DNA of 64,000 nucleotides from Convolutriloba macropyga (Eukaryota). The stretch spans positions 70,680,001-70,744,000 of the forward strand of contig NC_134471.1 of assembly GCF_964194025.1 (NCBI RefSeq), in the 5' to 3' direction. Shown here in pieces: positions 18,821 to 43,148 of this stretch (position 1 is the stretch's first letter; the number at the start of each line of letters is the position of its first letter). The position numbers were made by a program, and so were the translations under genes. The notes below the pieces were generated by a model that was not told where the DNA came from, ran no database searches, and worked only from the letters and a program-made list of their open reading frames with translations.

Positions 18821-19164
18821 ATGGAATTCGACGGGGAAATTGAGGGTAGTGGGGTGACGGTGAAGGCATCCGACTACACCGATTCGGAGAGCATCATATC
18901 ACGCGATTTGTTCCACCATCTAAATTATTCCTACAATTGCCTGATTCCCATCAACGGTTATTTCATCAGGAAGGATCTGAGCCATAATTCGAAGGCGTGC
19001 AAGCTGAGTATCTTGGGAATCATGGATTTTGAAATTGACATGTGTTTGTACGACACCAGAGGGAGGAGATTCACTGTTAGATTGAGACCCTATGTCGTTG
19101 AGAGTGACTTCGATGATGTGGTGATTGGAAGAAATTTGATAAGCAACGTGTCAAGTAGAGGGGG
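18821..19164 (+). CDS. Coding exon 1 of a retropepsin-like/RNase H1 fusion gene: retroviral-type aspartic protease fold with a degenerate active site
   Basis: GEIEGSGVTVKAS-DYT-DSESIISRDLFHHL ... SILGIMDFEIDM ... FTVRLRPYVVESDFDDVVIGRNLIS follows the retropepsin pattern (g.i.g..v..l.D[ST]G....is..l...l ... dvilGr.fL). Strong donor GTGAGT at 19165, phase 2. Confidence 0.7.
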
Positions 19165-19416
19165 GTGAGTTTTATCTAAACTGCCCGATATCGGTCAAAT
19201 TAATGGTGATATCAAAGAAGTCGCTCGTACAGCAGTCAAATCTGACGTATCGGAACTACGTGCCATCGCAATTGTCTTCTGATGATAATTAATCCATAAT
19301 GTTTTGAAAGTTGGCATAAGATATGTGGAGAAATTAGGCTGATCAGTCAATTGCGCATGCGGAAAAAGTGCAGGCTATTGCTTAAATCTGAAATTGTTGC
19401 TAGCCCTAAACAGCAA

Positions 19417-19537
19417 TAAAATACTCACGTGCACCTTTTAAAATGCCGAAAGTCTGCAGTGCCAGAAGTTGCTACTTAGCCAGAATCTCAATTTCGTTGC
19501 CTTTCGTCATTTTAAAAAGTGCGCGTTTCGTGTTTTA
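19417..19537. repeat. Imperfect inverted repeat with about 37-bp arms (MITE-like)
   Basis: taaaatactcacgtgcaccttttaaaatgccgaaag pairs with ctttcgtcattttaaaaagtgcgcgtttcgtgtttta. Confidence 0.6.
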
Positions 19538-19540
19538 AAC

Positions 19541-19659
19541 ATGGTTAAGTGACTCTGCAGAAGTCACTTCGAAATTCTGACTTGATATCTCGAACCGCTT
19601 CGCGGTTCTCGATAAACGCCAGAAGTTCTCAGTGACTTCAAGCAGAGTCACTTAACCAT
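19541..19659. repeat. 119-bp near-complete palindrome (hairpin)
   Basis: Perfect 18-bp outer arms atggttaagtgactctgc ... gcagagtcacttaaccat; pairing continues inward to an apical gaaccgc-ttc-gcggttc. Confidence 0.75.
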
Positions 19660-22600: not shown

Positions 22601-25600
22601 AGTTAACTGTTTTTTCGATATTTTTGGTCAGATATTTCTGGCTGTTTCACCAATCAGTTCGTAGTGCCTTCTAATTTAGTCAATAACAATTCATCGAATT
22701 GCCGGTCAGTATTTGTCCTGCTACGGTTTTTACAGTCCAAATATTTGGATCGGATTGGTGCGCTTTCTTAAGATCTGTTCAGATTTTTCCGACTTTTTAA
22801 TGTGAATAAGTAAAATTTGAGTATTGATTCTAGTCCCGCTGTAGAAGTAAAGCACTGGAGAAGTGTAACTGCAATTTTGGTTTGAAGCTTAATTTAATTT
22901 AATCAATCGTTACAGTGGGGTGAATATTTGGTGTCTTGACTAATTTTTGGTTTTTGAGATAACATTTTTCACGTGCCTAAAATATGACTTCGGTTTACGA
23001 TGTTTTGAATATAGTGCAGAAATATATTAAAAACTTATTATAAACTTTCACACGTGGTTTAATTGCGTCTATTTGAACCTGCAGCTGCTGCTTTTCTGCC
23101 CGTGTTATAAAATATTAGTGAATTCTGTTTGCGTCTTTTTTACTCCTGTTGGCTTATCAGTCAGTCTTATTACTGGCAACCTCTTCGGTTTACCATTGAA
23201 AAAATTTTCTCAATTCTCATGTTGGAAGCAGTTAAATTATTTTTCTTTGTTTTGCATTTTTTTTGCTTAGAGGACACTAATTTTGAAAAAAATTCTGATA
23301 TTTGCGAAACGTTCTTTGTTTCATGGATTTATCCAAGGTTTTTGTAGGGTGAACTTAAGCTATAGTCAGTAGTTATATAAATTGTTGTTGTTTTTGGTGA
23401 TTTTTACGACAGTATTTTTGGAAAAATAAATTATTAAAACTAGCTGCCAGATTTTTTTTATTTGCGCATTTATAGACATATGCTTTGCTGACTGACAAAA
23501 TTTGATTTTTCTGGAAAAATGTTGATGTTCCGGTCATAGGTTAATCCAATTAATTAGGTTTTATTCCAGGGCTATGTTTCATATTAATTCGCTTTTACGT
23601 TTGATAACGTTTTTTGTTTTACATAAGTCACGATTTTGCTCAGACTTACCTCACTCACTTTTTCAATTGGATCAATTTTAGATGCTTTTATTCATTGAAT
23701 TACGCAATGTAGTGAATGTGGTGAAAATCAAGAGAGCAAAATCAAAGAAACGGGATAATCCAATAATCCCGGTCATTAAGTCATTAGGTTACCAAAGTTC
23801 AATGGAACGATTGCTAGCTGGCATCGGTACTAAGCAGAATAGCCTTCATTTTAGAAGCTGAATTAAGTATAATTTTCGAGCCTATCTGAAATTGTGCGCT
23901 CAATTAGAACAGTTTTTGACACTTTCGGTTAATTACGATATCCTCTTTTTTTGTGTTTCAATCCTTAATTGCGTAAAAGGAGGTTAACTGCGGCTATTTT
24001 TCGCGACATTGGCTGGCTATAGTGAAATTGATTTTGATCGAGGCAGCAGCTCTATTGAATTTTTATTAATGATTATTCATTAATCTTTGAATTGATTTGT
24101 TGTCAGTATATATGGCGAGGATGCTTTTGAGCTTTTTCTTTCTTTTTGAGCGTTTGAAGTGTTTTTTCTGAATGTTTGCTTGCAGTTCTGGTCGATCAAT
24201 TTGTTGCGTAATTTGTTTTGGTTCATTTAGTTGAGATATTTTATGATCATTAGATTTTTTGGCTATTCATAGCTAAATGTTTTTGACCGTAAGTGCATGA
24301 AAATTAAAGGCAAATTGGTTTAAATGACAGCTTCGTCTGTTATTCAACGTTACCTTTTATTTCAAAGAAGACTGCTTCATTTATAAGACAAATCGGCAAA
24401 ATCAAAATTTCAATTTTTTTGATTGACTTTTATTTACACTTAATTCATTTGCTTGTCGGTTATTAATTTTTCCAGGAGTCAGTTTTTTTTCTGACGAATG
24501 TAATGAATTTTCAAATAGGTTTCAACTGATTGAATAATTTTTGTTGCTCAGTTGTGTAAAAGCACTTTGATTGATTAAGATCTAATTTTATAACTGACTT
24601 TTTTTGCATTTTGTGATCCTAAAATTTAAACTTTTTGAGTTCCGGATTTTATAGTTTGTGATTATCGGCCCTAATTTTGCTAATGAACTACGTGTCTAGA
24701 TCTCTAAGGACAGTGTTGAGATCTGGATTCTCTCACCATGATTATTACCCGGGCGGTTTTCTTGAGTTTGCAAGTGTTTGTCCGTTTTAAAATTTTGACC
24801 ACTTCTGCTTCACCAGATAGTTTGTTTCTGTTTTTGTTACAAAAATTGAATAATTGCCTAAGATTTGATTTTGTTATTGTTTATCAATTTGTGTAATTTA
24901 TGAAATTTTCGATCATACATGACCTACCTCGCTAAATGACTTCTGCACTCGTTTTACTTATAATTTGAGAATTTAAACTCTAACTGAACTTCGATAAAGA
25001 TAGGATCGCGTGAAACAGATAGTTAACATGCTATATTGCTTGAAAGACATTTGTGTTTGTAATTAAGTTCGAAAATAATGATATAATTAAAAATCTGATT
25101 GTAATTTTTGATTGGCTTTTTGCCTTTGGTCTGGATAGTTTTTTTTTTAACTAGGAATCTTTTTCGTGGCTTATATTCTGGCAATCTGCCAGCTATGTTT
25201 CTTGAAGTTAGAGAGTTTCAATGCAAATTGGTCTTTTTGGCACCTGCTCTCAAAGTTTAGCATTTATGTCAGTCTGTTGGCATTCCCTTTTTCAGTTTTC
25301 GTCTAATCATTTTCCTTCCTAGTGGTTCCGTAAGATTAATTTAGCTACCCTGAAAGGTAATCACTTGAATGTCGTTTAAGAGAAAATAGTCAGCGACGTT
25401 TGATACTTATGTTTTTATTTACGACTAAAGGTGTTATAATTTGGTGTCCTTTAGATGTTCCAACTAACTGGGTTATCATCTCTAAACCATAAACACTATT
25501 TGTTTTCTAGCATTCATTAGCTTTCATATGACCTCTCACTCATGACGTAATCCTTTTTGAGGCGTTAGTGTATTTTCTTTCCCCATTTCATTATTTTTGG

Positions 25601-25612
25601 TAATATTTTCAG

Positions 25613-25761
25613 AGTCGAGGTTCTCGGACGCCGAGTGACGTTTGAAAGTGACCGGAGCGACGAGTTGATCAAATTGACTCTGTACCAGGACTCGTTCTCT
25701 TTCATCAGAAGTGGGTATCGCAATAAATACGTCGTCGTATATGTAGATGGATCGTGTTTTG
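25613..25761 (+). CDS. Coding exon 2 of the fusion gene: linker plus the first RNase H motif (VVVYVDGSCF)
   Basis: Acceptor taatattttcag (25612) and donor GTAAGT (25762). Phase 2 in and phase 1 out, matching both neighbouring exons. Translation VEVLGRRVTFESDRSDELIKLTLYQDSFSFIRSGYRNKYVVVYVDGSCFG. Absent from the ORF track. Confidence 0.85.
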
Positions 25762-27099
25762 GTAAGTTGGGATTATTATTAACTTGGTTTTAAGTTGCAA
25801 ATTTAAGCTTGAATGAAAACAAAGCGATATGGCTATTAATTTACTCTTAATTTAAAAAACTATATAGCCATTAAGGAATCAAGTTAATAAAAAGACTCAG
25901 CCACATAAACCTCAAGGCAGCTCAACTTTAAACCCAGCATTGGGACACTGGCGTCCCCGTGTCAGAGCAGTACGTACCTCGGGTGACTACGATTTATGTT
26001 CGAATAGATATACTTAGACAATTACCGGTGCATGCACTTCATCTCAATCATCTGAATGCCTTCATGCAATTTTTACACTGTTTTTTCCTTCCTATTTTGA
26101 CTGGATGCGTGCTATTTTGACGCACAGTCTGATTGCTGAATCATGCATTCACTGTGCGTGATCACGCTAGCTCGGTGTTTTGAGATCTAAAATTTTTATA
26201 GTTGAGCTGATTATCCGACTGCTCATTTTTTTTACCACAGGTGAATTTGTACCGCATTTTTCATCAGATGTTTAATATGTTCAAGCAGCCTTTTAGCTAA
26301 AATTGAAAATGACTAAAATTGACGTTTATTCGTTTATTGTTAAATTTTTTTGTTCTCTCCGGTTTTTGTCAACAATTTTTGGATTTGGACTTAAAGAAAT
26401 AACGCCCTCTACAGTTGATTTGAATGAGCAGATTTGGCTATTTGGAATTATGCATTTTTTAAGAAAAAGCTTTTTATCAGCCTCCAGATGTTGTATGTAG
26501 TTGACAGTTCAATTGTTTCTTAGGGTTTAGTTTTCAAACTTAGAAAAAGTTTGTTCCTAATGTCATTGTTTGCTCTCGCCTTTTGCTATTCTGGCAATAC
26601 TTTCTAACGGTTTTAGTGTGTGAATCCATTTTCAGCTTTTTTTGCAGCCAAAGTCTAATGATGCTAACGAATTTCTATTAAAAATGGAATTTTTAATTGT
26701 TTCCAATATACTGTTTTTTTTTGCTTTTTGTCCCGAGCTTCTGTTTATCTTATGATCAAAAGCAAAGTCATTATTGAGCAAAATTTATTTGACTTAATCA
26801 TTTAAATTGATTGAATGAAATTGGTTTTCAGAAGCCTAGTAAATGTTGTGCACTCAGCACAAACTCATCCCTCAGTTCCAGCAGGTCATCAATATGCTTC
26901 AAAGAAGCCTAGTCTAGTGATGCCTTTAAGCAGTTTAAAGGCACTTGGCCAGAAATCCTTAAACAAAATTGCGCTCTTTGGCAAAAAAATGGATTTAAAA
27001 AACCAATAAAATTTCAAAAAAATAAAGGTTCAGTAAATTTTTGGAAGTAGTTCAGCATTGCCATGAATGGAACATTAGACGCACAAAAATAAAATTTGC

Positions 27100-27832
27100 C
27101 AATTTGTTTCTATTTATTGCTTTTATACTTGTTGTAAAGTTGAGATTGTAGTTGAGCATGATGAGCAAATTCCTTACCCTTACACCAATAGATTTAGAAC
27201 TACAGCTAGTTGCGTCATTGGGTTGTTTCGATGGATCTACATGTACTTCTCGCTTTTCGTACCTTCTCAAGATCAACTTAAGTTATTATTGATTTAATTT
27301 CCTCCAATGGGCTCTCGTTCCTCAACTATGATTAATAACGTTAAGATTTCTTTCAATTTCAGTTCCTTTACAGCTTAGATCTGATTGCCTTCTCTCACAG
27401 TACGAATTGAAGCGTATTTTCTCAAACCGCATATACTTCTAACCAAATGACACAGTTTAGATTCCAGGGGCTCTTGGGCTGTTTTGCTTGCCGTTGCATA
27501 CAAAAGTTCAGCAATTTTTTGAGCAATAGTGAAGCGATTAAGTATTGAGAATCGGTAATTTTATAATGGTTATCAATAAAAAGGAACTTTGCATAAGGTT
27601 TTGGTTTAATAATTTCCTCATTTTTCACAGGGTGAACAGTAAAGCTTCCACTATTTCTTTTTACAATTTTTTGTCTTGGATTTTTAATTTTACCAACCGA
27701 CAACGTAGTTTACGCGTTCTTGATAATGTATACTACTGTTCATTTTGTTTTGCAGAACTCTTTCATCGGCAAATATTATAATCCAAAGATGATTGAAAAT
27801 TGGGTGATCTCAATTTTGCCAAAAATGAGAAT
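27100..27832 (-). mobile_element. 3' part of a decayed CR1/L2-type LINE (RT C-terminus and 3' end)
   Basis: The minus strand reads LIF.. then IFADERVL (YADD-equivalent), continuing the motif broken at about 33380. AATAAA on the minus strand near 27115. Confidence 0.6.
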
Positions 27833-28195
27833 TCTTGAACGTATATTTTTAATTGTTTGAATATGAAAAAAGTATGCTCACTTGCTGATTTACATCTGTG
27901 TTGTCCAGAAATCAATTCTAACTTCACGTGCAGTACTTACTGATGTTTTCCAGTACTATTCCTTTTTTACATGTAAATTGATAAAACTTGATGTTGACGT
28001 GTGATTGATACCTACGATAAAATGCTAGTAAACATCACATGTCACCGAAAGTTATTTTTATGTAATATAAAAGGGCGCTTATAACTGGGTATATAATTCG
28101 ATCAAGTTTTGGGCCTATTGCCACTGTTGTCAAACATCAATTCTAATTGAATTATTTGACTACACGATTTGTCTCTGTGTTCCCCTTAACCGATA
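27833..28195 (+). repeat. Copia 5' LTR
   Basis: Aligns with 33025-33378 and is followed by the PBS. Confidence 0.85.
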
Positions 28196-28217
28196 GGTTA
28201 TGGGGCCAGAGCTTTTA

Positions 28218-29020
28218 TGAGATAAGTAATCAGCCCGCTCTAAAAATAACACTATGCTGTTTTGTCTCTGCGCTGCTTTAGAGGATTGTTGACGTCAGTT
28301 GGAAAACGAACGAGAGGACAAGACTTGTAGTCAAGCAGTGGTCAAGAGTCAGAAGGAAAGCAAGTGGGACTGAAGCTCCAGTGTGCTCTAATTACGTTGG
28401 AGAACGAGTTTGTGTAGCTGATTGGAGGACTGCTGCTGGTAGAGAACGAGCTTGTGTATCTGATTGGAGACTCTGTTTGGATGGAGGGGGTTCTGTAGCT
28501 GATTAGATGACTCTGTTGGTGGAGAGAGAGCATCTGTAGCCGATTGTGGACTCTGTTTTTGGAGAGGGAGCATCTCTTGCTGCTTGTGGACTCTGTTTGT
28601 GTGGAGGAGATTGTGTATCCAATTTGAGGACTCTGTTTGTGGAGAGGGAGCATCTGTAGCCAATTGTTGGACTCTGTTTGTGGCGAAGCTTGTGTAGCAG
28701 ACTGGGTAACTCTGTTTGTGGACACGGAAGTTGTGTAACTGTGTGTGTGGCTTTGTTTGTGGAAGCTTGTGGGGGTGTTTTGTGTTCGAGTAGATGTTTG
28801 TGTAGCAGAACTTTCTAGGAGGACTTCTCCGGCTTACTTAGTATTGCTGAGAACAGCTCAGTTTAAACAACTGTTTTTTTAGCCTCATTTCTCATTGTGC
28901 TATCCTCACTGTGCTCATAGTGCTATCTTGTTGCATTCTCAATGTGCTAAAAGCATTTTTGGCTAATACAGCGACACACCGATTCGTCGCTTAATAACGA
29001 GGCCACCAACAGGCAACACA
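28218..29020. mobile_element. Putative solo LTR (803 bp) inserted just downstream of the Copia PBS
   Basis: Begins TG (28218), ends CA (29020) and is flanked by ttta on both sides (28214-28217; 29021-29024). Contains an internal tandem array. Confidence 0.5.
28390..28810. repeat. Degenerate tandem repeat with units of about 40 bp (gactctgtttgtggagaggg.gcatctgtagc..att)
   Basis: The ctctgttt motif recurs about every 40 bp. This explains the spurious ORFs 28342-28725 and 28388-28663. Confidence 0.85.
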
Positions 29021-29239
29021 TTTATCTAAACGCTAAAAAAACACTTAGGAGTTTTGCTCTAAGGCCGATTATTTTCAACTCATCCTATAGCAAAAGAGCA
29101 AAATCTTACGTAGAACAGTTTTAGCTTTCGAGTAAACCACAGTAACACAGGGTATATAGGCTAAACGAATAAAGTTTGAGTTATAACTAGGTAAAAAGGA
29201 AAAACTATAAAAAAGAATTTAAAACAGACAGGTAAAAAT

Positions 29240-32200
29240 TGAGTTCGAAGTCAGAGAGAATAATTTTTAGTGGGCGTGAGGATGATTTCCTATATTTTGC
29301 GGAACAGTTTGAAGCTCGTATGCACTCGTTGATATTAGGAAAAAGCTTTAACTGGCGATGCCACGCATGAAGATATGCCTACTGTTAAAAATGGCGCATC
29401 AGAGGAACAAAGAGCACACGCTGTAAAAAAAAAGGAAGAAAAGAACTAGAAGAGAGGAAAGGACTTTATGGTACGAACTTGTTCGAGCTTTAGATAAAAA
29501 GTCAGTTCTGTTTCTGAGACCACATAAAGGTGATGGTACTGAAGCTTGGGATATATTTTGCAAATGGTTGAAGAGTTTCGAGAGACCGCAATTATATAAA
29601 CTAATATCAGAATTAACTAGCCTTAAAAAGAGCTTGAATGAAAGCAGAGTAGACTACTTAACGAGAGCAGACGACATGAATTACAATTTGACACTGGGGA
29701 ACGAAGGCAAGAGCGAGAAAATGTTTATTTCAATAATTGTGAATGGACTACCTAAAGAATACGAGAGCTTCACCACACTCGTAAAATTGAGTAAAAAAGA
29801 GAAGAGTTTAGAAGAAATTCAGCGGGACCTTACCAATTTGGATAATGAGAATGTTCAAAAGAAAAGTGAGAGTATTTTCTACACTAAAGAACGAAAATGC
29901 TTCAAGTGTCAAAAGGTTGGACACATATCTAAGGATTGTCTACTTAAGAAGGCAAATACAGAACAAACAAGGGGGCAACCAATAAAGTGATTTAAATGTG
30001 GCGAGCAGGGTCACATCTCCAAGTTTTTAAGAAACAGAAACCAGAGAAAAAGTTTGTAAGCCAGAGCAGAAAGTTTAATCAAAACAATCAATCGGGGTCT
30101 CAGAGTTTAGTTGAAAAACCAAAAACGGAGTGTGAAGAATACTTCTCATTCTTTCAAACCGCAATCAATAATCCTTCGTGTGAACTAGTGTTAGACTCTG
30201 GAGCAACAAGTCATATGAATAAGGATGAAAGCTTTTTTTTTGGGATTGACAAAGAATATATAGGGACAATAACTAACGCAAATAATTGCAAAAGTTCAAT
30301 TGAAGGACGAGAGACAATTGAGATAAGAACAGAGGATTCAAAAGGGTGCCAGCGGAAATTAAGATTGTCAAATGCAATATTTGTTTCTGATAACTCGAAA
30401 AATTTGGTCTGTGTCGAAACTTAGAGCGGCTGATAATGAGGTTTTGTTCGGCAAGGACTTAGAGATCAGAACTAAAAACGGAACGATTTTCCCATTTGAG
30501 GAACATGACAATCTTTTCCTCTTGAAAACAGTGAATTCAACAGGTACAGAAAACTAACTTAGTCAGTGGAGACCGGCTAAGTTTATGGCACAAATGTCTA
30601 GTACATAATATTGAAGATCTTTTGAAATTAAAGGATCATGCCGTAGGACTCAGAATAAGTAAACTTGACGTAGGGAATTGTGAAATATGTCAATTGAAAA
30701 AGTCAATGAAGCCTCTCGTTCCGAAAGATTCCGGGACAAGAGCTAAAGATGTCTTAGAAATATTCCAAACTGATATTTTAGGGCCAAGTTCCTAAAGACA
30801 AGAGATGATGCAATAGAAAAGGTCCGGCGATTCTTTGCAGATATACGAAAACCAGGAACGTTGGTGTGCAATGGTGCTGGCAAATTCAGTTCGAACGAGA
30901 TGGCAATTATGTATAAAGCAAGGCGTATGACTAGGGTTTTCCGCACCTTATACATCAGAAGACAAAGGCGAAGTTGAACGTAATTGGCGAACAATAACAC
31001 AATGGCGAGATGTCTAATCGAGCAATCAGGACTTGATAAGACATACTGGTCTTGTGCAATAAACATGTCAAGTGACATTAAGAACTTTCGTTACCATTCG
31101 GGGATCAAAAGAATACCATTCGAAGCAATGTATGGGCAAAAGCCGAATTTTGAAGCACTGAAACTTTTTAGTTGTACTGCTTAGGTTCATATTGAGAAAT
31201 CATTCCGAAGGAAAGTAGATCGGACTTCACAAAAAGGTATGTTCTTGGGATCATCAAATAACAGCAAAACATATCTTATAGGACTAAGGGATGAAAAAGG
31301 CACATTTAAAGTTAGTCTAGAAACGTAACTTTAAACGAACAGAAAATGTTCAATAATAACTCGTTGAGTGGAGGTCAAAAACGGTTAGAATAGGAAGCAG
31401 ATCTGAATCCAGTAGCATTCTTAAATGACTTGATAAATTATAATGTGATACCTAAATAAACAGAAGAAGCAATAAAAGACAAAAATTGGTACGAAGCAAT
31501 GAAAATTCATATAATTCAGAGTATAATTCATTAGTTGAAAACAACGTGTGGGAACTTGAAGATAATCAGGAAATCAAACCTATTGATAGCCGTTGGCATT
31601 GTGCTCTGAAGTGGGGGCCTAGCGGAGAAATAGTGAGATATAAAACCAGATTGGTAGCTAAAGGTTTTAGCCAAGTACCAAGCAGAGTCTACAACGAGAC
31701 CTATTCACCGACAACGCGCCTCTCAATTTTCAGGATACTTTTTAGCTATGCACTCTGTAACGGTTCTGAGCTCAAATAAATGGACATTATAACTGCATAC
31801 TTAAATGCTGACATTGGTGAAGAGATCTTTTAGCAGTAACCTGAGGGTTTGAAAAGTTCAATGAGCATAGAAATCTATTAGTCTATAAGCTTAATAAAAG
31901 TTTATATTGAGTGAAACAATCTGGTAGGAATTGGTACCTTTCAATAAAAGTTTTCTTGGGGGTTTGGGTTTTGTTCAATCTGTTCAAGTTGAGTGCCTCT
32001 TTATAAAAAAGACAAAGGAGATATAGAGGGAATGATCTGTCCTTGGGTACATGATATGGTTATGTTAGGAACTCTACAAAAACTTTTGCGAAAACTTCAA
32101 AAGAAGGCAGTGAAAAGTTTAAAGTAAGTAGCTATGGTAACCTGAGTTGGTTCTCAAACATTAAAATAGAATGGATAGAAAACAAAATAATGCTAAGCCA

Positions 32201-33015
32201 AGAGGATTATATAGAATAACTAATAGAGTTTAAAATGAGTGACTGTAGGACACTGGAAAAATGTCTAGATGTTAGTTCAAAACTTTCAAAACTTGATTCA
32301 CCAAAAATAGGAAGCAAAGAATATCAAGATATGCAGTCTTGTGATTATAGGGGAAAAGTAGGATGTTTAAAATATTTAGCGTTGAGTACCAGACCAAATA
32401 TTGCACAAAAAGCTAATTTTTTGAGTTCGTTAGAAGAAATTCCGGGGAACAAGCATCGGAACGCCGCAAAATCTTGCCTACGCTACTTGAAGGGTACAAA
32501 GTCTGAAAAGCTTATATATACATAGGAAGTGTGATCAATTGGATCTAAAAGTTTTTTCGGATTCTGACTGGGCTGGTAACCTAGATAGCAGAAAAAGTAC
32601 GAACGGTTTGTTTCAAGCTTGACAATAGTTCAGGAGCAATTAGCTGGGCTAGTAAGTTACAATAGTGCGTATCAACCTCCACAGCTGAAGCTGAACTGAA
32701 TGCAGTAGAAGAGGCAACAAAGAGGCGGCACACTTAGCAAACCTTTTGAAGGAAAGGAACATAGAAGTTGAAGAACCTTTACAAGTGTTTGTAGATAATC
32801 AAGCATGTAGTGCTCTTAGTAAGATTTCCATGAACCATGGCAAGACTAAGCGCTTTGCGTTGAAAGTGAACTTCATTCGGAACTTAGTCGAGAACAGACT
32901 ATTAGAGCTGAACTACTTGCCTACCGATCGCCTGCCGGCAGATACCCTAACAAAGGCTTTGGGGAGAACAAAAATATCACTTCCGTGATTTTCTCCTAGG
33001 TTCAAACACTTATGA
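29240..33015 (+). pseudogene. Copia gag-pol, disrupted
   Basis: Fragmented ORFs 29568-29990, 29996-30424, 30984-31184, 31486-31779, 32235-32525 and 32746-32988 carry Copia motifs in Copia order. Confidence 0.9.
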
Positions 33016-33024
33016 TAGGAGGGC

Positions 33025-33378
33025 TATTAAATGTATAATATTAATTGTTTGAATATGAAAAAGTATACTCACTTGCTGATTTACATCTTTGTTGAGAAAA
33101 CAGTGCTTATTTCACGTGCAGTTTATATTGATGCTTTCGAGTACTATTCCGTTTTTATATGTGAATTGATAACACTTGGTGTTGACGTTTGATTGATGCC
33201 TTTGATAAAATGCTAGTTAACATCACATGTCACCGAAAGTCATTTGTATGTTATATAAAAGGGCGGTAATAACTGGGTATATAATGCGATCAAGATTTGT
33301 GCCTATTGCCACTTTTGTCACACATCAATTCTAATTGAATTATTTGACTACACGATTTGTGTTTGCGTTCCCTTAAAA
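33025..33378 (+). repeat. Copia 3' LTR
   Basis: Follows the polypurine tract and aligns with the 5' LTR with many substitutions, indicating an old insertion. Confidence 0.85.
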
Positions 33379-33379
33379 A

Positions 33380-36300
33380 GTAGAGGCCCCAGAACTGAAC
33401 CATGCGGCACTCCAACTCCAATTGTTTTCCTTGATGATAGTTGAATACGCATTCTAAATCTGTGACTTTTGTTCGATAGATAAGAAGACATGAGTTATTG
33501 TATCGGCCCTCGGAAGCCCAGATCAAGAAGTAAGTTAACCAGGTGTTTATGGTTCACTGTACCAAAAGCTTTTCGTTAACCCGAAGAATGTAGCTCTTTT
33601 TTTGATGAAGTCTTTATTTCACATGTCTTTTGTTTTTAATACGTTAGCTGGACTAGAGTGCTACCTGTGAACATTTTTCTTATGAAGCCTTACTGTTTTT
33701 GAAACAGAACATTGTTTTTGTTGTGAAAACTGCTGTATTTGAACGAATAAGATTTTTTCAATTGTGTTGCTGATTGTAGGTAGGATAAAAATATGCCTAA
33801 ATTTGTTCGGATCAACAAAGTGTTCCAATTTATGGAGGGGAATAACTATTGCCTCTTTCAAACATTCTGGGAATACGCGCTTCTTGTTGTAGTCATCAAA
33901 TGGTACTGTTTCTACAGGAACAAGCACAAATTTAGTCTTTGACAGTGAAAATGTTCACACAGTGATGATCTTGTGAAAACATAATACCAATTTGTTTTTT
34001 TTTGTTCTATTCGATCTCATTATTTGTTTTTGACTTTGAAAGTAGGCGTCATTTTAGATGCAACTGCAAAAAAATTATCGAACAATCCGACACAGCTTAT
34101 TGCCTTATGGAAGCTTCCATTTTTTTTGTGTTGGAATTAAATTTTCTTTGATAAAAATTGCGTAACTTTTTCCATTTAGTTTTTGCAACTTGTTTTTTTC
34201 TATTGTACTTTAGTTTACTTCATGCAGTTTTGTCTCGTAAGCAAGTTTGATAGAGGTTATTTGTCAGTGAAGCTAAATTTCTGAACTTCGTTATCCACCC
34301 AAACTTGTTAGACGTTAACTTGTTTGGATACTTTTGTTGGAATAAACTGATTCTGGTAGCGTCCACGAGCCCATGAAACTTCATAAAATCTGCTTTTAAA
34401 TAATCATCGCCGTAGCGCTTTTTAAGAACTCAGCCAAAAACCTAACTTAGCTTGAAATCCATGTTTGGCAAAATTGAGGAATAATTAATTTTTTTCCAGA
34501 GTCTCGCAGTAAAGGGTTGATCTGTATCTAATTGTAGTTTGCAAGGAATTAAATCCGTGTAATGTTGAATCAGTAGTCTTGATGGTAGAGGTCTCAATTT
34601 CATATGTTAATACGCTACATCAATACTGCTTTTATGGGTGGTTTCCCTTGTGCTGCAAATTTTATGACAGTTACGGAAGTCAAACTCGTAGGGAACGTTT
34701 TTTTTAAGCTATTAATTGTCACCATGGTTTCCTTATGTCGATATTCAGATCACCACATAGGAAATGGATATCGCCAGGTTTTTTCAACATCTTCGAGATA
34801 GTCTTGAAATACTTCTGTAAAATTTTTTTAGGATGCAATTGGTTTCATTTACGTGTCTGTGATTAAAACACTCTTTTTGTGACTTTTAGTTATACCGAAA
34901 AAAAATCTGACAGAAATTATTTTGTATGTAGACACTTCATGCCTTCTAATTTTTTTTGAAAATTGGTTGCAACTCCTTTCGTTTCTGTTACATGCAATTA
35001 GTTTCTGATCGCCATGTTTTTCAAAACAGTGTGTGTCGCAATGTCATTGAGCCATGTTTCAGTGAAACATATTTAAATAGGTTTAATGTCTAATGCTGAT
35101 TGATACTCGTGCAACCAGTTCATCAATTTTTTTTACGTATTGATCTAATATTTTGATGATTTATTGTTTCATTTGCGCTCATAATTATGTTTTTGGACAT
35201 CAAGACAATGATTCTGTTGTTTTACCTGTTCTCTTGGTTTTGCGAATTAAACATGGTCAAAAACTCCTCATTTTGCCTATTAGAATCCCAACCAAAACAA
35301 AACTGTTTATTGACAGAACAGACATAACAAACTAACTTTTTTCTTTCCCGAAATTTATTTGCGAGTCTTTCAAGGAAAGGGGTTTCATGAGGATTTTCTA
35401 TCAAAGTTAGCAGTTCTATATTCAATAATTGGTTTTGGATTCTGAAGGTATTAGTGCGCTTAGTCTCATTGGAATCTTGTTACTATTTCTCTGTTAAATG
35501 TTTCAGCGGTTGATGAGATTGGTGCGAAGTTTACTGGATTAGTGCCTAATGCTTTCGTTTTTGGTTGGTACTGTTGATGGAGGTGCCGACGCTACATTCA
35601 TGAGTTCATCCGGCTGTGTCTTGTTTTTGTTCCTCACAGAAATGCTTTTGTTCCGCTAGTAATCTGAGTGGGAAAAGAGACGTATTGAGAAATTTTAACC
35701 CTTAATTGTTTCTGATTCATGTATTGCGTTTCGAGTAGCTTTTGACGCCCAGAAGATTTTTTAACGGAATTTTGCCTTGCTGTGTTAGTTTGGCCTATTT
35801 TTGCTTCAACTGTTTTAATTGGAGATACAGATTGGTATCATTTGTCGTTTTTTTCTGTCTGTTAAAATTTGAAGTTTTTTTCGTCAACATTTTTGTGGAA
35901 AAACTTTGATCTTTGTGCTTTTTGGCTAATAGATCGAATGTGTTGTATCTGAATGATATCTGGGATGCGTTTGTTTTCCTGTTTCTGTTTGAAACAATTT
36001 AAGTTTCAGCCTTTTTTTCGTACAATTTGTCTTGAAATTTATTTTTCGTTTGGCTTGTTGATTTTCATGTTAGTAACTTTAGCTTTGATTGACTTTTGCT
36101 TCTCACTTACGGTATTCAAACGCATAGTTTTTTTCTCGATATCTCAAGCAACGGTTTGAAGTGCATTTGCACGATTAAATTTTCATCATCCGTGGCTTAG
36201 TTGACTTAATAAAATGACCTCCACACCTTGTAGCTTATTTTTGTTTAAAATTAGTTTGACCGAAGAAAATCATTTGTATAATAAACGTCACTGTTAGAAA
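33380..36300 (-). mobile_element. 5' part of a decayed CR1/L2-type LINE (ORF1 remnant, APE endonuclease, RT N-terminal half)
   Basis: Minus strand: ISETWLND-like APE motif (about 35050-35075), VFPECLKEAIVIPLHK...ILPTISNTIEKIL (33661-33927) and GVPHGSVLGPLLF (about 33375-33415). The 5' boundary is approximate. Confidence 0.75.
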
Positions 36301-36674
36301 GACTGTGGAATTAAATCAAAGAAAAAAATAGCATTTTAGCTGTCGATGAATTCAACTCGGTTCCTTATCTATTTCTAGCTAATTGCTTCGGCAGCAATTC
36401 TATTTGGCAGCTATATTCGGTAGTCTGCTGGCTATGTCTATACAACATTAACGAAGAAAGAAGCAATCTGGTTAGGCTGAAACAATCTGGTCTTGTTGTT
36501 TTGGAGAATATGGTCTAATCTAAATCTTTTTTCGTGAAATGTTGGTCGAACTAGTTGCCTAGTTTATTTTTATTTTTCAAATCCCAGAGCCTTACGTTGA
36601 TTCGAATTTCCTTGTGCCAAATATGTATTTGAGAACTTCAGATCATTTGGCATCGTATTTGGCTGTCCGTTTAG

Positions 36675-37108
36675 GTAACGGAAGGTCCAATCCAGCGCCA
36701 GGAATTGGACTTTACTGGGGGAATCATCACCCGTTAAACATCATCCGATCTGGAGATCTTCGGTCCACGAATAATGGAGCAGAACTGGAAGCCGTTATTC
36801 TGGCTCTGAAGACTGCTCTAGCGAACAACGAAATCCAAAATTTGATAATCAGAACGGATTCCCTTTTGACCGTAAATAGCGCTACCAAATGGATTCGGAA
36901 ATGGAGGCGAAACGATTGGCGAAGTTACAATGGCTCCCCTGTCAAAAACCAGAGTCTTTTGAAGACAATAGATGATCTGCTTTATGACGCACGATGCTGC
37001 AATATTGATGTTCAATTCGTTCACATCCCAGGCCATAAAGGAGAGTATGGCAACGAAATGGCGAATAAATTTGCACAGTGGGGCGCTAAAAAATTTCGAC
37101 ACTGTTAA
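36675..37108 (+). CDS. Coding exon 3 of the fusion gene: eukaryotic RNase H1-type catalytic domain
   Basis: Acceptor ccgtttag (36674). NGRSNPAPGIGLYWGNHHPLNI, TNNGAELEA, IRTDS, KWIRKWRRNDWRSYNGSPVKN and HIPGHKGEYGNEMANKFA match RNase H1 motifs. Confidence 0.9.
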
Positions 37109-38156
37109 CAGAGCAGATTACGAGCAACTGCCTGGTGTTATAAGTATGGCTCCAGATACATAAAAAACTGACTTTATTTTGAGCCGAGTACAGATCAATT
37201 GAAATGTGCTCAAGATTAGTGCAGTGTTTGTAATTATTTGAGTAAAGTATTTTATTACATTTTTAGTAATATATTTTTAGTAATATATTTATAAATATAA
37301 AACATATATTTTAGTAAAATAATTTATTACTTTATAAATTTTAAAAATGCTGTCTATTTGCGCTGAAAAATTTTGCGTATCATTCATAACGATTAGAAAC
37401 TTTTTGTCCTTTGTTTTTAACAACTATTTGAAATGAGTACTGACCAATTAGCCGACTAAAAGTTTCTTGTATGGACTTTCTTCATACATTCAATAAATTC
37501 TTATTATTTTGTAACTATAATAGTTGGGGTTCAGGGGTATTTTCGGGCTGACAAATTTTTGATTTAATTTTTAGGTGAGCAATATGCGGCTTTTAGAAAA
37601 CGGTGGCCATTTAGAAAATAGGCGACAGATATTACAAAGAGTTGATAGATTTTTTTAAGACATATACATGAGATGTATATCAAAGATGGTTGTTCAAATT
37701 CGAAAAATGAACATAAAAAGAGTTGAAATGGAGCTATTTGGAAAGGCCGCTAACCTTAAAATGATTATAATTATGCTCAATTTCATCTTTTATCAGTTTT
37801 TGAAACTTCGTTTTTATCAAATTTATGGTTCAGACTTTGAATGATCGCTAGAAGTCTTAATGAAAACTTTTTTTCGTCTGCATAGGGCCTAGAACGTTTT
37901 CCATCTTAACTTGGAGAGCATGTGATGTCCTTCAATTCAATTTTACAGCGCAGCTTTTGGATTTTTTTCGGCAAGTAAGCTTCCAAGTGCCTCTGAGATG
38001 CCAAAAATGCTGCTTTGATTGTACTTTTAAATGAATACTTTGAGATTACCGGCTTTTTTGTATGCATTTTTTGCTCATGATCTTTGTCAGCTTCTTTCAG
38101 AGAGAACCGTTAATTGCTATAAGTATTAAGCTATTGAAATTATTTTTTTGAAATTG

Positions 38157-41100
38157 AGTTCACTTTAATTATCAAATTCCTTTAAAACTAACGCAGCCAA
38201 TTAACCCACGGTTTAACTTGTATTCAAAAATCAAGCCATTGCCAACACTTTTTCTCCGCCAGCTTTGATCCAAATTGATATCAGGGCTGCTCACTTCCGC
38301 CATTTCCGGTGATGGCTGTTTTTCCTTTGGCTGTCATCCTTCGGCTGTTTTTCTTTCCCAGATAGTTATATTGCGTTTCTAGCACAATTTGTGTAAAATT
38401 CTTGCACAATTTGGAGTTAGAAACAATTGGACTCGCACACGGACTCGGTCAGTTGTTTGTTAAGATGATGGGAAGGCCAATTGTGCACCTGGAATTGGGT
38501 GTTTTGGACTACTATTAACTTCTGAACACCCATCGTTGTAGGGAGTGATTTTCTATTATGGACGCTGAAATTAGCAAACCGATTATCAAAACTGGCTGAA
38601 TATTTACGATCAGTGGTACCACTGACTGAATCAGGCATTGGAAGAAAAATAACCGGAGGATGTGGGTGGGAACTCCCGTTGTGAACCGTGATTCAATGTA
38701 GACCTTTGATGAGATTTTAGTTCGGGCTGAAGATTTTGCCGTTAACTGAAGATTCGTTCACGTTACGGGGCATAAAGGGGATTTCGAAACGAAATGGCCG
38801 CTAGGTTTGACGTAGTGGAGTCAAAAACTTTTAGACATGCAAAAAATGTGGCTGATAGGTTTGGACAGATGAGGTTGGGAGTCAATACAGTTTTAATCTT
38901 GAACCCATTAATTAGTTATTAATGGATATTTTGAAGTTCACTTTAATTATCAAATTCCTTTAAAACTAACGCAGCCAATTAACCCACGGTTTAACTTGTA
39001 TTCAAAAATCAAGCCATTGCCAACACTTTTTCTCCGCCAGCTTTGATCCAAATTGAGATCAGGGCTGCTCACTTCCGCCATTTCCGGTGATGGCTATTTT
39101 TCCTTTGGCTGTCTTCCTTCGGCTGTTTTGCTTTCCCAGATAGTTATATTGCGTTTCTAGCACAATTTGTGTAAAATTCTTGCACAATTTGGAGTTAGAA
39201 ACAATTGGACTCGCACACGGACTCGGTCAGTTGTTTGTTAAGATGACGGGAAGGCCAATTGTGCACCTGGAATTGGGTGTTTTGGACTACTATTAACTTC
39301 TGAACACCCATCGTTGTAGGGAGTGATTTTCTATTATGGACGCTGAAATTAGCAAACCGATTATCAAAACTGGCTGAATATTTACGATCAGTGGTACCAC
39401 TGACTGAATCAGGCATTGGAAGAAAAATAACCGGAGGACGTGGGTGGGAACTCCCGTTGTGAACCGTGATTCAATGTAGACCTTTGATGAGATTTTAGTT
39501 CGGGCTGAAGATTTTGCCGTTAACTGAAGATTCGTTCACGTTACGGGGCATAAAGGGGATTTCGAAACGAAATGGCCGCTAGGTTTGACGTAGTGGAGTC
39601 AAAAACTTTTAGACATGCAAAAAATGTGGCTGATAGGTTCGGACAGATGAGGTTGGGAGTCAATACAGTTTTAATCTTGAACCCATTAATTAGTTATTAA
39701 TGGATATTTTGAAGTTCACTTTAATTATCAAATTCCTTTAAAACTAACGCAGCCAATTAACCCACGGTTTAACTTGTATTCAAAAATCAAGCCATTGCCA
39801 ACACTTTTTCTCCGCCAGCTTTGATCCAAATTGAGATCAGGGCTGCTCACTTCCGCCATTTCCGGTGATGGCTATTTTTCCTTTGGCTGTCTTCCTTCGG
39901 CTGTTTTGCTTTCCCAGATAGTTATATTGCGTTTCTAGCACAATTTGTGTAAAATTCTTGCACAATTTGGAGTTAGAAACAATTGGACTCGCACACGGAC
40001 TCGGTCAGTTGTTTGTTAAGATGACGGGAAGGCCAATTGTGCACCTGGAATTGGGTGTTTTGGACTACTATTAACTTCTGAACACCCATCGTTGTAGGGA
40101 GTGATTTTCTATTATGGACGCTGAAATTAGCAAACCGATTATCAAAACTGGCTGAATATTTACGATCAGTGGTACCACTGACTGAATCAGGCATTGGAAG
40201 AAAAATAACCGGAGGATGTGGGTGGGAACTCCCGTTGTGAAACGTGATTCAATGTAGACCTTTGATGAGATTTTAGTTCGGGCTGAAGATTTTGCCGTTA
40301 ACTGAAGATTCGTTCACGTTACGGGGCATAAAGGGGATTTCGAAACGAAATGGCCGCTAGGTTTGACGTAGTGGAGTCAAAAACTTTTAGACATGCAAAA
40401 AATGTGGCTGATAGGTTTGGACAGATGAGGTTGGGAGTCAATACAGTTTTAATCTTGAACCCATTAATTAGTTATTAATGGATATTTTGAAGTTCACTTT
40501 AATTATCAAATTCCTTTAAAACTAACGCAGCCAATTAACCCACGGTTTAACTTGTATTCAAAAATCAAGCCATTGCCAACACTTTTTCTCCGCCAGCTTT
40601 GATCCAAATTGAGATCAGGGCTGCTCACTTCCGCCATTTCCGGTGATGGCTATTTTTCCTTTGGCTGTCTTCCTTCGGCTGTTTTGCTTTCCCAGATAGT
40701 TATATTGCGTTTCTAGCACAATTTGTGTAAAATTCTTGCACAATTTGGAGTTAGAAACAATTGGACTCGCACACGGACTCGGTCAGTTGTTTGTTAAGAT
40801 GACGGGAAGGCCAATTGTGCACCTGGAATTTGGTTTTTTGGACTACTATTAACTTCTGAACACCCATCGTTGTAGGGAGTGATTCTTGTTCGTTTTAGGG
40901 AGTGATTTTCTATTATGGACGCTGAAATTAGCAAACCGATTATCAAAACTGGCTGAATATTTACGATCAGTGGTACCACTGACTGAATCAGGCATTGGAA
41001 GAAAAATAACCGGAGGATGTGGGTGGGAACTCCCGTTGTGAACCGTGATTCAATGTAGACCTTTGATGAGATTTTAGTTCGGGCTGAAGATTTTGCCGTT

Positions 41101-41295
41101 AACTGAAGATTCGTTCACGTTACGGGGCATAAAGGGGATTTCGAAACGAAATGGCCGCTAGGTTTGACGTAGTGGAGTCAAAAACTTTTAGACATGCAAA
41201 AAATGTGGCTGATAGGTTCGGACAGATGAGGTTGGGAGTCAATACACAGTTTTAATCTTGAACCCATTAATTAGTTATTAATGGATATTTTGAAG
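38157..41295 (+). repeat. Four-copy tandem array with a 778-bp unit and near-identical copies
   Basis: Units start at 38157, 38935, 39713 and 40491 and differ by a few substitutions. Copy 4 has an extra 23 bp (cttgttcgttttagggagtgatt) and an extra ac. Confidence 0.98.
38465..38840 (+). pseudogene. Decayed paralogue of the RNase H exon; repeated at 39243-39618, 40021-40396 and 40799-41197
   Basis: After the acceptor ttgttaag it reads DGKANCAPGIG.., EISKPIIKTG*IFTISGTT, *IRHWKKNNRRMWVGTPVVNRDSM*TFDEIL, RFVHVTGHKGDF/NEMAARF..KTFRH. This is colinear with exon 36675-37108, with stops, frameshifts and loss of the TNNxAE helix. Confidence 0.85.
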
Positions 41296-43148
41296 GATAA
41301 GCTGATGGTTGCTCCGATTTATAAATCTTGATTGTCCACCTGGTGTTGTGTGTAGTTGTTTTGAGCACGATGAAAAGCTATTTAAATATACCTAATAATA
41401 AAGGTAGTAAATGCAAATTTCGGTTTATTTTCCCTTCGGTTAATATTAAGGTCGCAGAATATTGCAGTAGTTATTAGGTTCTGATTATTAGAGTGAAGTT
41501 TCGAGTCATCTAGCGTCGAGCTTCCTTGCCATCAGAGCGTGGCTTGAGCAATATAAGTTTTGTGCCTTACCGCCACTTTTGAGTTTGTTATTGCAAAACT
41601 ATTAGTGAGGAGAGTTGTTTTAGATTTATAAGTTTCTACAAGGACAAATGTCATGCAAAAACCAAAGCCATAGGAAAATGTTTTTGTTCAATAGAGGAAG
41701 GTTTTTTGGCTTTTCAAATTTGGTGCGCTGTGTATTGTCTTTGGGCATGGATCCTTTGCTCAGATTTAATTTAAAAGCTATTTTCTAATTGTGTTCCTTA
41801 TTGGACCTTTGGTTACTTTTTTGTCGATGTTCAATGTGAAAATGTGTAGTGATGTGTGTGATGGTTCATATTATCTGCTTAAAAACAAAATTCGTCATAT
41901 CTATTTTGTTTATATTAAGTTTCATTTTTCTTTCACTTGCCACTCGCACGGTTAGGTAACTCATGATAACTTGGAACATGACATGACTTACTGTCTGAAT
42001 CGGTGTAGGCGAGAGAAGGGGGATCAGAATAAGAATAGATCTCAATTTCAGGGAGGCGACGAAATTTTCGGACTTCGAAAATCACTTGTTTCCTCTTCAT
42101 TATTCGTATACTGCTTAGTCCAATTAAGAGTCACAACGCAAGCAAAGGTTCTGAAAGTTAGTGTGGTACTGAGGTCAGAAGTCATGATTCACATCTGAAA
42201 TATGACAAAGATTTTGCTAAATAAATCGTGAACTATAATTGATCCTATTGAAGCTCATTTGCAAGTTCAGCCTTTTTCGAACGTTCGCTTTCGATTTAAT
42301 TTTATGGGACCGACTACAGAATTGTGCATTTTCTTTTATAGACACCAAATCAATTCTAATCAAATGGTTCTAAATGGTTCTTCAAATGGTTCTAAAAAAT
42401 CAAATTCTAAGCAAATTGAGAGTAAAAAGTTATGTCTTTTCAAAATGACTTACAGAATGAGGCACGTTAAGTGAGCTGGTCTAAATTTGACAAAATATGT
42501 GTGCTGGTAGTGAAATGATCTTTGACGATGGACAATAAAAGTACGCTTTTGCATTTTTCAAACCAGGCCTCCTGGCTGTCAATTTCATCACAGCTTTTGT
42601 TCTCTCCTTGTTGTAGCTTGATGGATTCTTGTATGGTCCTGCTCATGTATTGCTTGTTTAGAGCTATCTCTTATTAGTGCGAACGAGGGGAGGTGGGGGG
42701 GTATTATCTACCGAGTGCATACAGCGTTGTTGATTGTTTTTATTTCCCCTAATCCTCCCCTCGTACGTCCTTTGTTGCGTGCTCCAACACGCAATCATTA
42801 GAGCTCTTATCAATAAAATGAGATATAGTTCACAGTATGGACTCCTAAAGCACTTTCGACGTAAAGGAACTCTAATAAAATGTGTAACTTGACTAGAATT
42901 CAGTCAAATCTTTAGCTAAGCTAATTTTGATATTTCTTAGCTGGTTGACCAAAAGGTACCCAACTCCCCGTTTTTATCGGTTGTTTTTGCACGAGTTGAT
43001 TCTGGTTCCATATAAGGAACTAGAAACATGACGATTGAATGCAATAGTTGACCCGGTAATTGTGACAAAGGAGGTGTTTTTGTTGACGTTGCTGGTTCCA
43101 GTGGCTACTGTTGGAATCCTCAAATATTGTACCGGATTCTATGTCGAC

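What the first reader, a model, noticed from the sequence alone, without database searches (positions are those of the whole stretch)
38157..41295. The 778-bp tandem array is four copies of a dead RNase H exon lying just behind the live one
Seen: each unit holds a colinear but strongly diverged copy of exon 3 on the same strand, beginning after an acceptor at the equivalent position and phase (ttgttaag|at gat ggg vs gtttag|gt aac gga). All four copies share the same stops and frameshifts yet are nearly identical to each other. Inference: an ancient local duplication of the gene decayed and was then amplified very recently. This points to a birth-and-death gene family, a pattern common in defence genes. 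The units might act as alternative terminal exons giving a nuclease-less isoform, or as a small-RNA source.
Basis: partly seen in the sequence, partly recalled or inferred. Interest (0 to 1): 0.7.

Follow-up and report, generated by a model that had tools for sequence, protein, structure and literature searches.

The report
Dead RNase H exon, tandemly amplified
Just downstream of a working RNase H1-like gene in the acoel worm Convolutriloba macropyga lies a very old, thoroughly broken copy of that gene's last exon that was recently multiplied into a short tandem array; it looks like ordinary genomic debris, not a working part.

Summary
Window 38157-41295 holds four head-to-tail units (778, 778, 778 and 803 bp) that differ by only 3-8 substitutions. 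Each carries a colinear, same-strand relic of the RNase H exon at 36675-37108 (tblastn E 2e-12 to 2e-14).

The relic is dead. It has six stops and two frameshifts. About 20 codons, including the catalytic Glu, are lost, and a catalytic Asp is replaced by Gly.

In a tree it is sister to the neighbouring live exon (support 97/93), not to the canonical RNase H1 on another chromosome or to transposon RNase H. Almost all change sits on its own branch (1.47 against 0.08). The unit occurs nowhere else in the 1.18-Gb genome.

Contigs from independent read sets break exactly at the unit borders, so the tandem structure is real. Different samples show different unit forms.

RNA-derived contigs confirm exon 2-exon 3 splicing. 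They cover the array only weakly and run unspliced through the proposed acceptor. The longest exact match to the live exon is 11 nt.

Verdict: an old local partial duplication, dead almost from birth, with recent and probably polymorphic amplification. The birth-and-death family, alternative-exon and small-RNA ideas find no support. Interest is low.

The parts
36675..37108 (+). Live exon 3 (RNase H domain from beta2 to the stop) of the RNase H1-like gene. This is the parent of the relic.
   Evidence: Pfam RNase_H E 2e-25. Acceptor AG at 36673-36674. An RNA contig carries the end of exon 2 joined here (loose end at 36669).
37109..38156 (+). 3'UTR (RNA contig reaches about 37318) and the spacer between the live gene and the array.
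   Evidence: X5 contig 36860-37318 at depth about 100, then contigs at depth about 10 through the spacer. No homology to the unit.
38157..38934 (+). Unit 1 (778 bp). It carries five private substitutions in its 5' part (38279, 38318, 38336, 38352, 38469).
38935..39712 (+). Unit 2 (778 bp)
39713..40490 (+). Unit 3 (778 bp)
40491..41295 (+). Unit 4 (803 bp) plus a terminal AG. It has a 23-bp internal duplication at 40873-40895 and a 2-bp insertion at 41244-41245.
   Evidence: The same insertions are seen in contigs of runs X2 and X5.
38464..38538 (+). Relic segment A in unit 1. It is 25 codons aligned to the start of live exon 3 (the APGIG stretch) and is followed by TAG at 38539-38541. The same segment lies at +778, +1556 and +2334 in the other units.
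38552..38785 (+). Relic segment B in unit 1, in a +1 frame relative to A. It is 78 codons with in-frame stops at 38597, 38627, 38699 and 38747. The catalytic Asp position reads Gly, and the GHKG motif is kept. Between A and B about 20 codons of the live exon, including the catalytic Glu helix, have no counterpart.
38788..38841 (+). Relic segment C in unit 1, after a 1-nt deletion. It matches the live C-terminal tail up to the last residues (NEMA...FRH). The stop at the homologous place is lost.
38463..38464 (+). AG at the position equivalent to the live acceptor. Its use was not observed.
   Evidence: RNA contig 38396-38934 runs through it unspliced.

Best explanation
The array is a non-functional relic. 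My reading has three steps.

1. Long ago a DNA segment holding only the last exon of the RNase H1-like gene was duplicated about 1.4 kb downstream of the gene. The copy had no promoter and no upstream exons, so it was dead from the start or soon after. It decayed to about 40% residue identity and 53% nucleotide identity over the alignable codons, gaining stops, frameshifts and a deletion of the catalytic-Glu helix.

2. Much later a 778-bp piece containing the relic was duplicated in tandem at a 2-nt AG microhomology. Unequal exchange or replication slippage then expanded it to the four units of this assembly.

3. The expansion is younger than typical allelic divergence in this species and appears to differ between individuals.

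The array is transcribed weakly, most simply as read-through from the live gene.

Shown: the homology, the breaks, the sister relation to the neighbour, uniqueness in the genome, the tandem structure in independent reads, and unspliced low-level RNA contigs.

Inferred: the order and mechanism of events, neutrality, and read-through as the source of the RNA.
For: Homology and placement:
- Translated similarity E 2e-14 to 2e-12.
- Read with X at each break, the relic scores 82.8 bits against the live exon, 43 against canonical RNase H1 and 17 or less against transposon RNase H.
- ML tree: relic plus live exon at 97/93 inside a 100/100 cellular-type clade. Terminal branches are 1.47 (relic) and 0.08 (live).

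Decay:
- Codon-position distances 0.68, 0.46 and 1.23. This is roughly K, K and 2K, as expected if one copy drifted freely while the other was constrained.
- Six stops, two frameshifts, loss of the Glu helix and Asp to Gly.

Extent of the duplication:
- No copy of exon 1 or exon 2.
- No flank homology.
- The unit is found only at this locus in the genome.

Recent amplification:
- Units differ by 3-8 substitutions in 778 bp, below the 3.65% heterozygosity reported for the species (PMC13650328).

Independent reads:
- DNA contigs of X1 and X2 end at 38186 and start or end at 38157 and 38934. X2 has one 805-letter contig equal to a whole unit-4-type unit, which is a cycle in the assembly graph.
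- Unit forms with and without the 23-bp insertion occur in different runs.
- X5, which behaves as RNA, shows the exon 2-3 junction, depth 100-300 on exon 3, and only about 10-12 over the spacer and unit, unspliced at 38465.

Other checks:
- No Rfam family in 37100-41800.
- No Pfam family for the antisense ORF.
Against: - Neutrality is inferred, not measured. Only contigs were available, not raw reads, so rare splice forms, strand, true copy number and absence of variants cannot be judged.
- The AG with a T-rich tract at the exact equivalent of the live acceptor is kept in all units.
- Segment B keeps one frame over 78 codons without indels, which is somewhat tidy for DNA this diverged.
- High identity between units could come from homogenisation rather than youth.
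Confidence: 0.8

Rival explanations
1. The array is old, and its units look alike because of concerted evolution (gene conversion or unequal exchange), not because the amplification is recent.
For: The private differences sit in the outer parts of the edge units: the 5' part of unit 1, and the insertions of unit 4. Edge units are the ones that escape homogenisation in arrays.
Against: - Samples carry different unit forms.
- Unit divergence is below the species' allelic divergence, which fits a young, polymorphic expansion.
- With four units the two models cannot be separated rigorously.
Confidence: 0.12
2. The tandem repeat is real, but the count of four is particular to the assembled haplotype or is over-assembled. 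Other individuals carry about two units.
For: In X2 the unit contig has a mean word depth of 92 against 45 for the flank. In X1 the figures are 126 and 71 against 72. In X5 a contig crosses the left border (38096-38335) without a break.
Against: - The tool warns that contig depth is not copy number and that contigs drop variants.
- A 3.1-kb array lies well inside single HiFi reads of about 10 kb at 64x coverage.
- The four units carry distinct markers.
Confidence: 0.2
3. The units serve as alternative terminal exons. Exon 2 spliced to 38465 would add 25 residues and a stop, giving an isoform with the orphan N-terminal domain but no nuclease.
For: AG at the equivalent position and phase, with a T-rich tract, in all four units. 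The region is present in RNA-derived contigs.
Against: - The RNA contig 38396-38934 runs through the site unspliced.
- RNA contigs tile continuously from the 3'UTR through the spacer.
- No loose end at 38465 was listed, while the exon 2-3 junction was seen.
- An AG at one fixed place has a 1-in-16 chance.
Confidence: 0.04
4. The array is a source of small RNAs that regulate the parent gene.
For: It is a tandem, transcribed, pseudogene-derived sequence next to its parent. From general knowledge, pseudogene-derived endo-siRNAs exist in animals.
Against: - The longest exact match to the live exon plus 3'UTR is 11 nt on either strand, too short for siRNA- or piRNA-type targeting.
- No inverted arrangement was seen.
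- No small-RNA data were available.
Confidence: 0.03
5. The relic stems from an intron-less copy (a retrocopy, or a duplicate made before the intron arose), and the AG is a coincidence.
For: Just upstream of 38465 another frame reads a TD..SC motif that recalls the beta1 strand encoded by the end of exon 2. The canonical paralogue on chromosome 5 is intron-less.
Against: - A profile of the N-terminal block scores the real upstream sequence no better than shuffles: 89 of 500 reach it.
- There is no exon 1 or exon 2 homology.
- There is no poly(A) tract after the relic.
Confidence: 0.08

Closest known systems
Unprocessed (duplicated) partial pseudogene or exon relic next to its parent gene
   Same: It is a DNA-level local copy of part of a gene, on the same strand and close to the parent. 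It lacks a promoter and upstream exons and is riddled with stops and frameshifts.
   Different: Here the relic was later amplified into a tandem array, and it is far more diverged (about 47% nucleotide differences) than most recognisable relics.
Macrosatellite or minisatellite arrays whose unit holds a gene or gene fragment (from general knowledge: human D4Z4 with DUX4, RS447 with USP17)
   Same: The units are kilobase-scale and head-to-tail, each carrying a gene-derived sequence. The units are very similar, and there are signs of variation between individuals.
   Different: There are only four units. The embedded sequence is a dead single exon, not an open reading frame. The unit is confined to one locus.
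Cellular RNase H1 (Pfam RNase_H, PF00075)
   Same: The relic descends from a cellular-type RNase H domain. It keeps the GHxG and NExA motif region and the order of the secondary-structure elements.
   Different: It has no intact frame, and the catalytic residues are lost. It is a descendant of the family, not a working member.

Membership tests
RNase H domain (PF00075), as a working member | Significant sequence similarity to the domain | tested here: met
   tblastn E 2e-14 to 2e-12 against the live exon, which itself matches PF00075 at 2e-25. A profile of cellular-type RNase H scores the X-joined reading at 55.6 bits. The stop-free pieces alone are too short for Pfam, and the units did not appear in the whole-genome PF00075 scan.
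RNase H domain (PF00075), as a working member | Open reading frame and the four acidic catalytic residues (D-E-D-D) | tested here: not met
   Six stops and two frameshifts. The first Asp is not present because exon 2 is not copied. The Glu helix is deleted. The second Asp reads Gly. The last position reads Ala.
Local duplicate of the neighbouring gene (unprocessed pseudogene) | Closest relative is the neighbouring gene rather than other paralogues or transposon copies | tested here: met
   Bit scores 82.8 against 43, 38 and 17 or less. Sister grouping at 97/93. Similarity extends into the gene-specific C-terminal tail.
Processed pseudogene (retrocopy) | Upstream exons joined without an intron, and a poly(A) tract | tested here: not met
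   No exon 1 or exon 2 similarity. The upstream beta1 motif is no better than shuffles, 89 of 500. No A-run after the relic. Decay could have erased such signs, so this is weak evidence.
Dispersed repeat, satellite or transposon | Copies at other loci | tested here: not met
   A whole-genome DNA search finds the unit only at this locus.
Birth-and-death multigene family | Many paralogues, live and dead, in clusters | tested here: not met
   Only the live gene, one canonical RNase H1 on chromosome 5 and this relic are of the cellular type. The other 40-odd RNase H matches group apart in the tree and mostly lie in long ORFs typical of transposons.
Alternative terminal exon | Splice junction from exon 2 to the unit in RNA | tested here: inconclusive
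   Not seen in RNA-derived contigs, which cross the site unspliced. Contigs can miss rare forms, and no raw RNA reads were available.
Tandem array real in the DNA (not an assembly artefact) | Unit-to-unit junction supported by independent reads | tested here: met
   Contigs of two DNA runs break exactly at the unit borders, and one 805-letter contig equals one whole unit. The number of units could not be verified.

The most novel reading that the evidence does not exclude
The copy-number-variable array, transcribed by read-through from the live gene, is used. It might act as an alternative 3' end that yields a nuclease-less isoform carrying only the orphan N-terminal domain. Or it might act as a cis element whose unit number tunes 3'-end formation and expression of the RNase H1-like gene.
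Probability: 0.05. Interest if true: 0.5.

Novelty: new member of a known kind. Interest (0 to 1): 0.2.

Why it matters
It matters mainly as a clean worked example. A single-exon duplicate stayed recognisable after roughly 0.5 substitutions per site of apparently free drift. It then became the seed of a young tandem array that seems to vary between cultured individuals of a species with 3.65% heterozygosity.

It is a useful marker for haplotype and clonality studies in Convolutriloba. It is also a caution for gene annotators, because the units could be mis-called as RNase H exons. It does not open a new biological question.

Tried and rejected
- TRF missed the array because its longest period is 500. 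The repeat finder found it.
- I searched exons 1 and 2 for copies near the array and found only noise.
- I tested whether the relic continues upstream into an exon-2-like beta1 strand, which would mean an intron-less origin. A whole-domain profile never reached that region. An N-terminal mini-profile gave no gain over shuffles.
- I looked for homology between the flanks of the live exon and of the relic and found none.
- Pfam on the stop-free pieces (21-25 aa) and on the 72-aa antisense ORF gave nothing usable. One call failed on a stop codon and was corrected.
- Rfam found nothing.
- The search for homologous proteins gave only three hits. One is a 98% allele on a 128.8-kb ENA contig.
- tblastn with the canonical domain was too insensitive for the transposon copies, so a small HMM was used instead.
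- The spliced exon 2 + exon 3 model was never joined. Exons were searched apart by reference.
- The large representative-protein search was not used, as nothing here rests on absence of relatives.

Full report
**Where we are.** The window is G000:C4:70680001-70744000 of an assembly of 1,175,981,408 bases in 4,694 sequences. That equals the published chromosomal assembly of the acoel Convolutriloba macropyga: 1,175.98 Mb, 4,694 scaffolds, PacBio HiFi at about 64x from one cultured specimen, heterozygosity 3.65% (PMC13650328). It described a three-exon RNase H1-like gene at 18821-37108 with an orphan N-terminal domain. I used that gene model and checked parts of it.

**The observation.**
- The repeat finder shows four direct copies spaced 778, 778 and 778/801 bp apart.
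- Aligned, the units are 38157-38934, 38935-39712, 39713-40490 and 40491-41293.
- They differ pairwise by only 3-8 substitutions.
- Unit 4 also has a 23-bp internal duplication and a 2-bp insertion.
- The array is followed by AG, the first two bases of a unit. This is a 2-nt microhomology at the junction.
- The last exon of the live gene (36675-37108; Pfam RNase_H E 2e-25) finds every unit by tblastn at E 2e-14 to 2e-12. Against the whole genome the values are 4e-12 to 7e-11.

**Anatomy of the relic (unit 1 coordinates).**
- Segment A (38464-38538) aligns with the start of the live exon, including the APGIG stretch. It ends in TAG.
- About 20 codons of the live exon then have no counterpart. 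They include the helix with the catalytic Glu.
- Segment B (38552-38785) is in another frame. It aligns over 78 codons without indels but has four stops. The catalytic Asp position reads Gly, and the GHKG motif survives.
- After a 1-nt deletion, segment C (38788-38841) matches the live C-terminal tail to its last residues. The stop is gone.
- All units share these defects. Unit 4's 23-bp insertion merely brings A and B into one frame.
- An AG sits exactly where the live acceptor AG sits relative to the aligned codons.
- At the DNA level only the motif region is alignable: 79% over 48 nt.
- Neither the intron side nor the 3' side shows similarity.

**Origin.**
- The genome has only one other cellular-type RNase H1, an intron-less 281-aa gene on chromosome 5 with a typical hybrid-binding domain.
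- It also has some 40 RNase H matches that mostly lie in long transposon-like ORFs.
- Read with X at each break, the relic scores 82.8 bits against the neighbouring exon, 43 against the canonical gene and 17 or less against the transposon copies.
- In an ML tree the relic and the live exon are sisters (97/93) inside a 100/100 cellular-type clade. They share a stem of 0.83. Their terminal branches are 1.47 (relic) and 0.08 (live).

The relic therefore descends from this gene's own lineage, after that lineage had diverged from canonical RNase H1. Nearly all later change fell on the relic.

**Age and mode of decay.** Over 114 alignable codons the nucleotide distance is 0.73 (JC). By codon position it is 0.68, 0.46 and 1.23. 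That is roughly what one expects if one copy drifted freely and the other kept its protein. This reading is soft, because the alignment was protein-guided and third positions are near saturation.

**Extent of the duplication.** Exons 1 and 2 have no copy nearby. A hint that the end of exon 2 might lie directly upstream of the relic (a TD..SC motif in another frame) did not survive a shuffle test: 89 of 500 shuffles score as well. Homology thus starts at the exon border as far as can be seen.

**Timing of the amplification.**
- Units differ by 0.4-1%, about a hundredth of the relic-to-parent distance.
- That is also less than the species' allelic divergence.
- The unit occurs nowhere else in the genome, so it is neither a satellite nor part of a mobile element.

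**Independent reads (all as Logan contigs, so presence only).**

Runs X1 and X2 cover intron, exon and spacer continuously, so they are DNA.
- Their contigs stop at 38186 and start or end at 38157 and 38934.
- X2 has one 805-letter contig that equals a complete unit of the unit-4 type. That is the signature of a cycle in the assembly graph, that is, a tandem repeat.
- X1 shows the form without the 23-bp insertion. X2 and X5 show the form with it.
- Contig depths over the unit are only about one to two times those of the flanks. The tool warns that this is not a copy number. I take it only as a hint that four units may not be universal.

Run X5 (2016, another study) is labelled 'DNA?' but behaves as RNA.
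- It has no intron cover.
- It has a loose end at 36669 that spells the end of exon 2.
- Its depth is 100-300 on exon 3.
- There is a drop after about 37318, then about 10-12 in contigs tiling the spacer and one unit.
- One of these contigs crosses the left border without a break. Another runs through 38465 unspliced.

Run X6 (another organism label, very low depth) holds a 151-nt piece of the unit.

**Function.**
- Nothing points to one.
- No exon 2-to-unit junction was seen.
- The weak RNA signal is most simply read-through.
- The longest exact match between the array and the live exon plus 3'UTR is 11 nt on either strand, too short for small-RNA targeting of the parent.
- Rfam and Pfam find nothing else in the units.

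**Verdict.**
- The extensions do not hold: birth-and-death defence family, alternative exon, small-RNA source.
- This is a new instance of a known kind of thing, of low interest beyond its use as a polymorphic marker and as an annotation pitfall.

**Limits.**
- Only contigs, not raw reads, were available. Copy number, strand and rare splice forms remain open.
- The spliced exon 2 + exon 3 model was not joined for any search.

Noticed in passing
window 37034-37068 (inside live exon 3); L042:1490-1540: A 35-bp stretch of the live exon (the GHKG..NEMA coding region) matches at least 40 dispersed loci at 92-97% identity. It has a word depth above 3000 in DNA contigs. The repeat's flanks do not code for RNase H. 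It may be a dispersed element carrying a fragment of this exon, or the reverse.
   Followed up: partly
window 37064-37066: The live gene has Asn where RNase H1 has its last catalytic Asp (NEMANKF instead of NExAD). The canonical paralogue on chromosome 5 keeps Asp.
   Followed up: no
window 36585-36890: Two alleles of exon 3 are present in runs X1 and X5. The second allele corresponds to protein P0001 (98% identity, ENA contig of 128.8 kb), probably the alternate haplotype.
   Followed up: partly
window 37259-37290: A 14-bp microsatellite in the 3'UTR or spacer lacks one repeat in runs X2 and X5.
   Followed up: no
window 28413-28722 and 29568-33000: Intron 2 of the RNase H1-like gene holds a 40-bp tandem repeat (7.7 copies). 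Next to it is a run of ORFs that looks like a copia-type retrotransposon (zinc-knuckle gag, integrase-like and RT-like ORFs, several stops).
   Followed up: no
G000 small contigs C4007:14528-14929, C1707, C4596, C333, C2229 (loci L020-L023, L034): RNase H domains lie inside uninterrupted open frames of 2,487-5,061 aa on small unplaced contigs. They form their own clade in the tree. They could be giant polyproteins or sequence from another organism such as the algal symbiont.
   Followed up: no
window 38417-38638, 39195-39416, 39973-40194 (minus strand): Each of units 1-3 has a 73-aa ATG ORF antisense to the relic. It has no Pfam family (best E 0.065) and is probably chance.
   Followed up: partly
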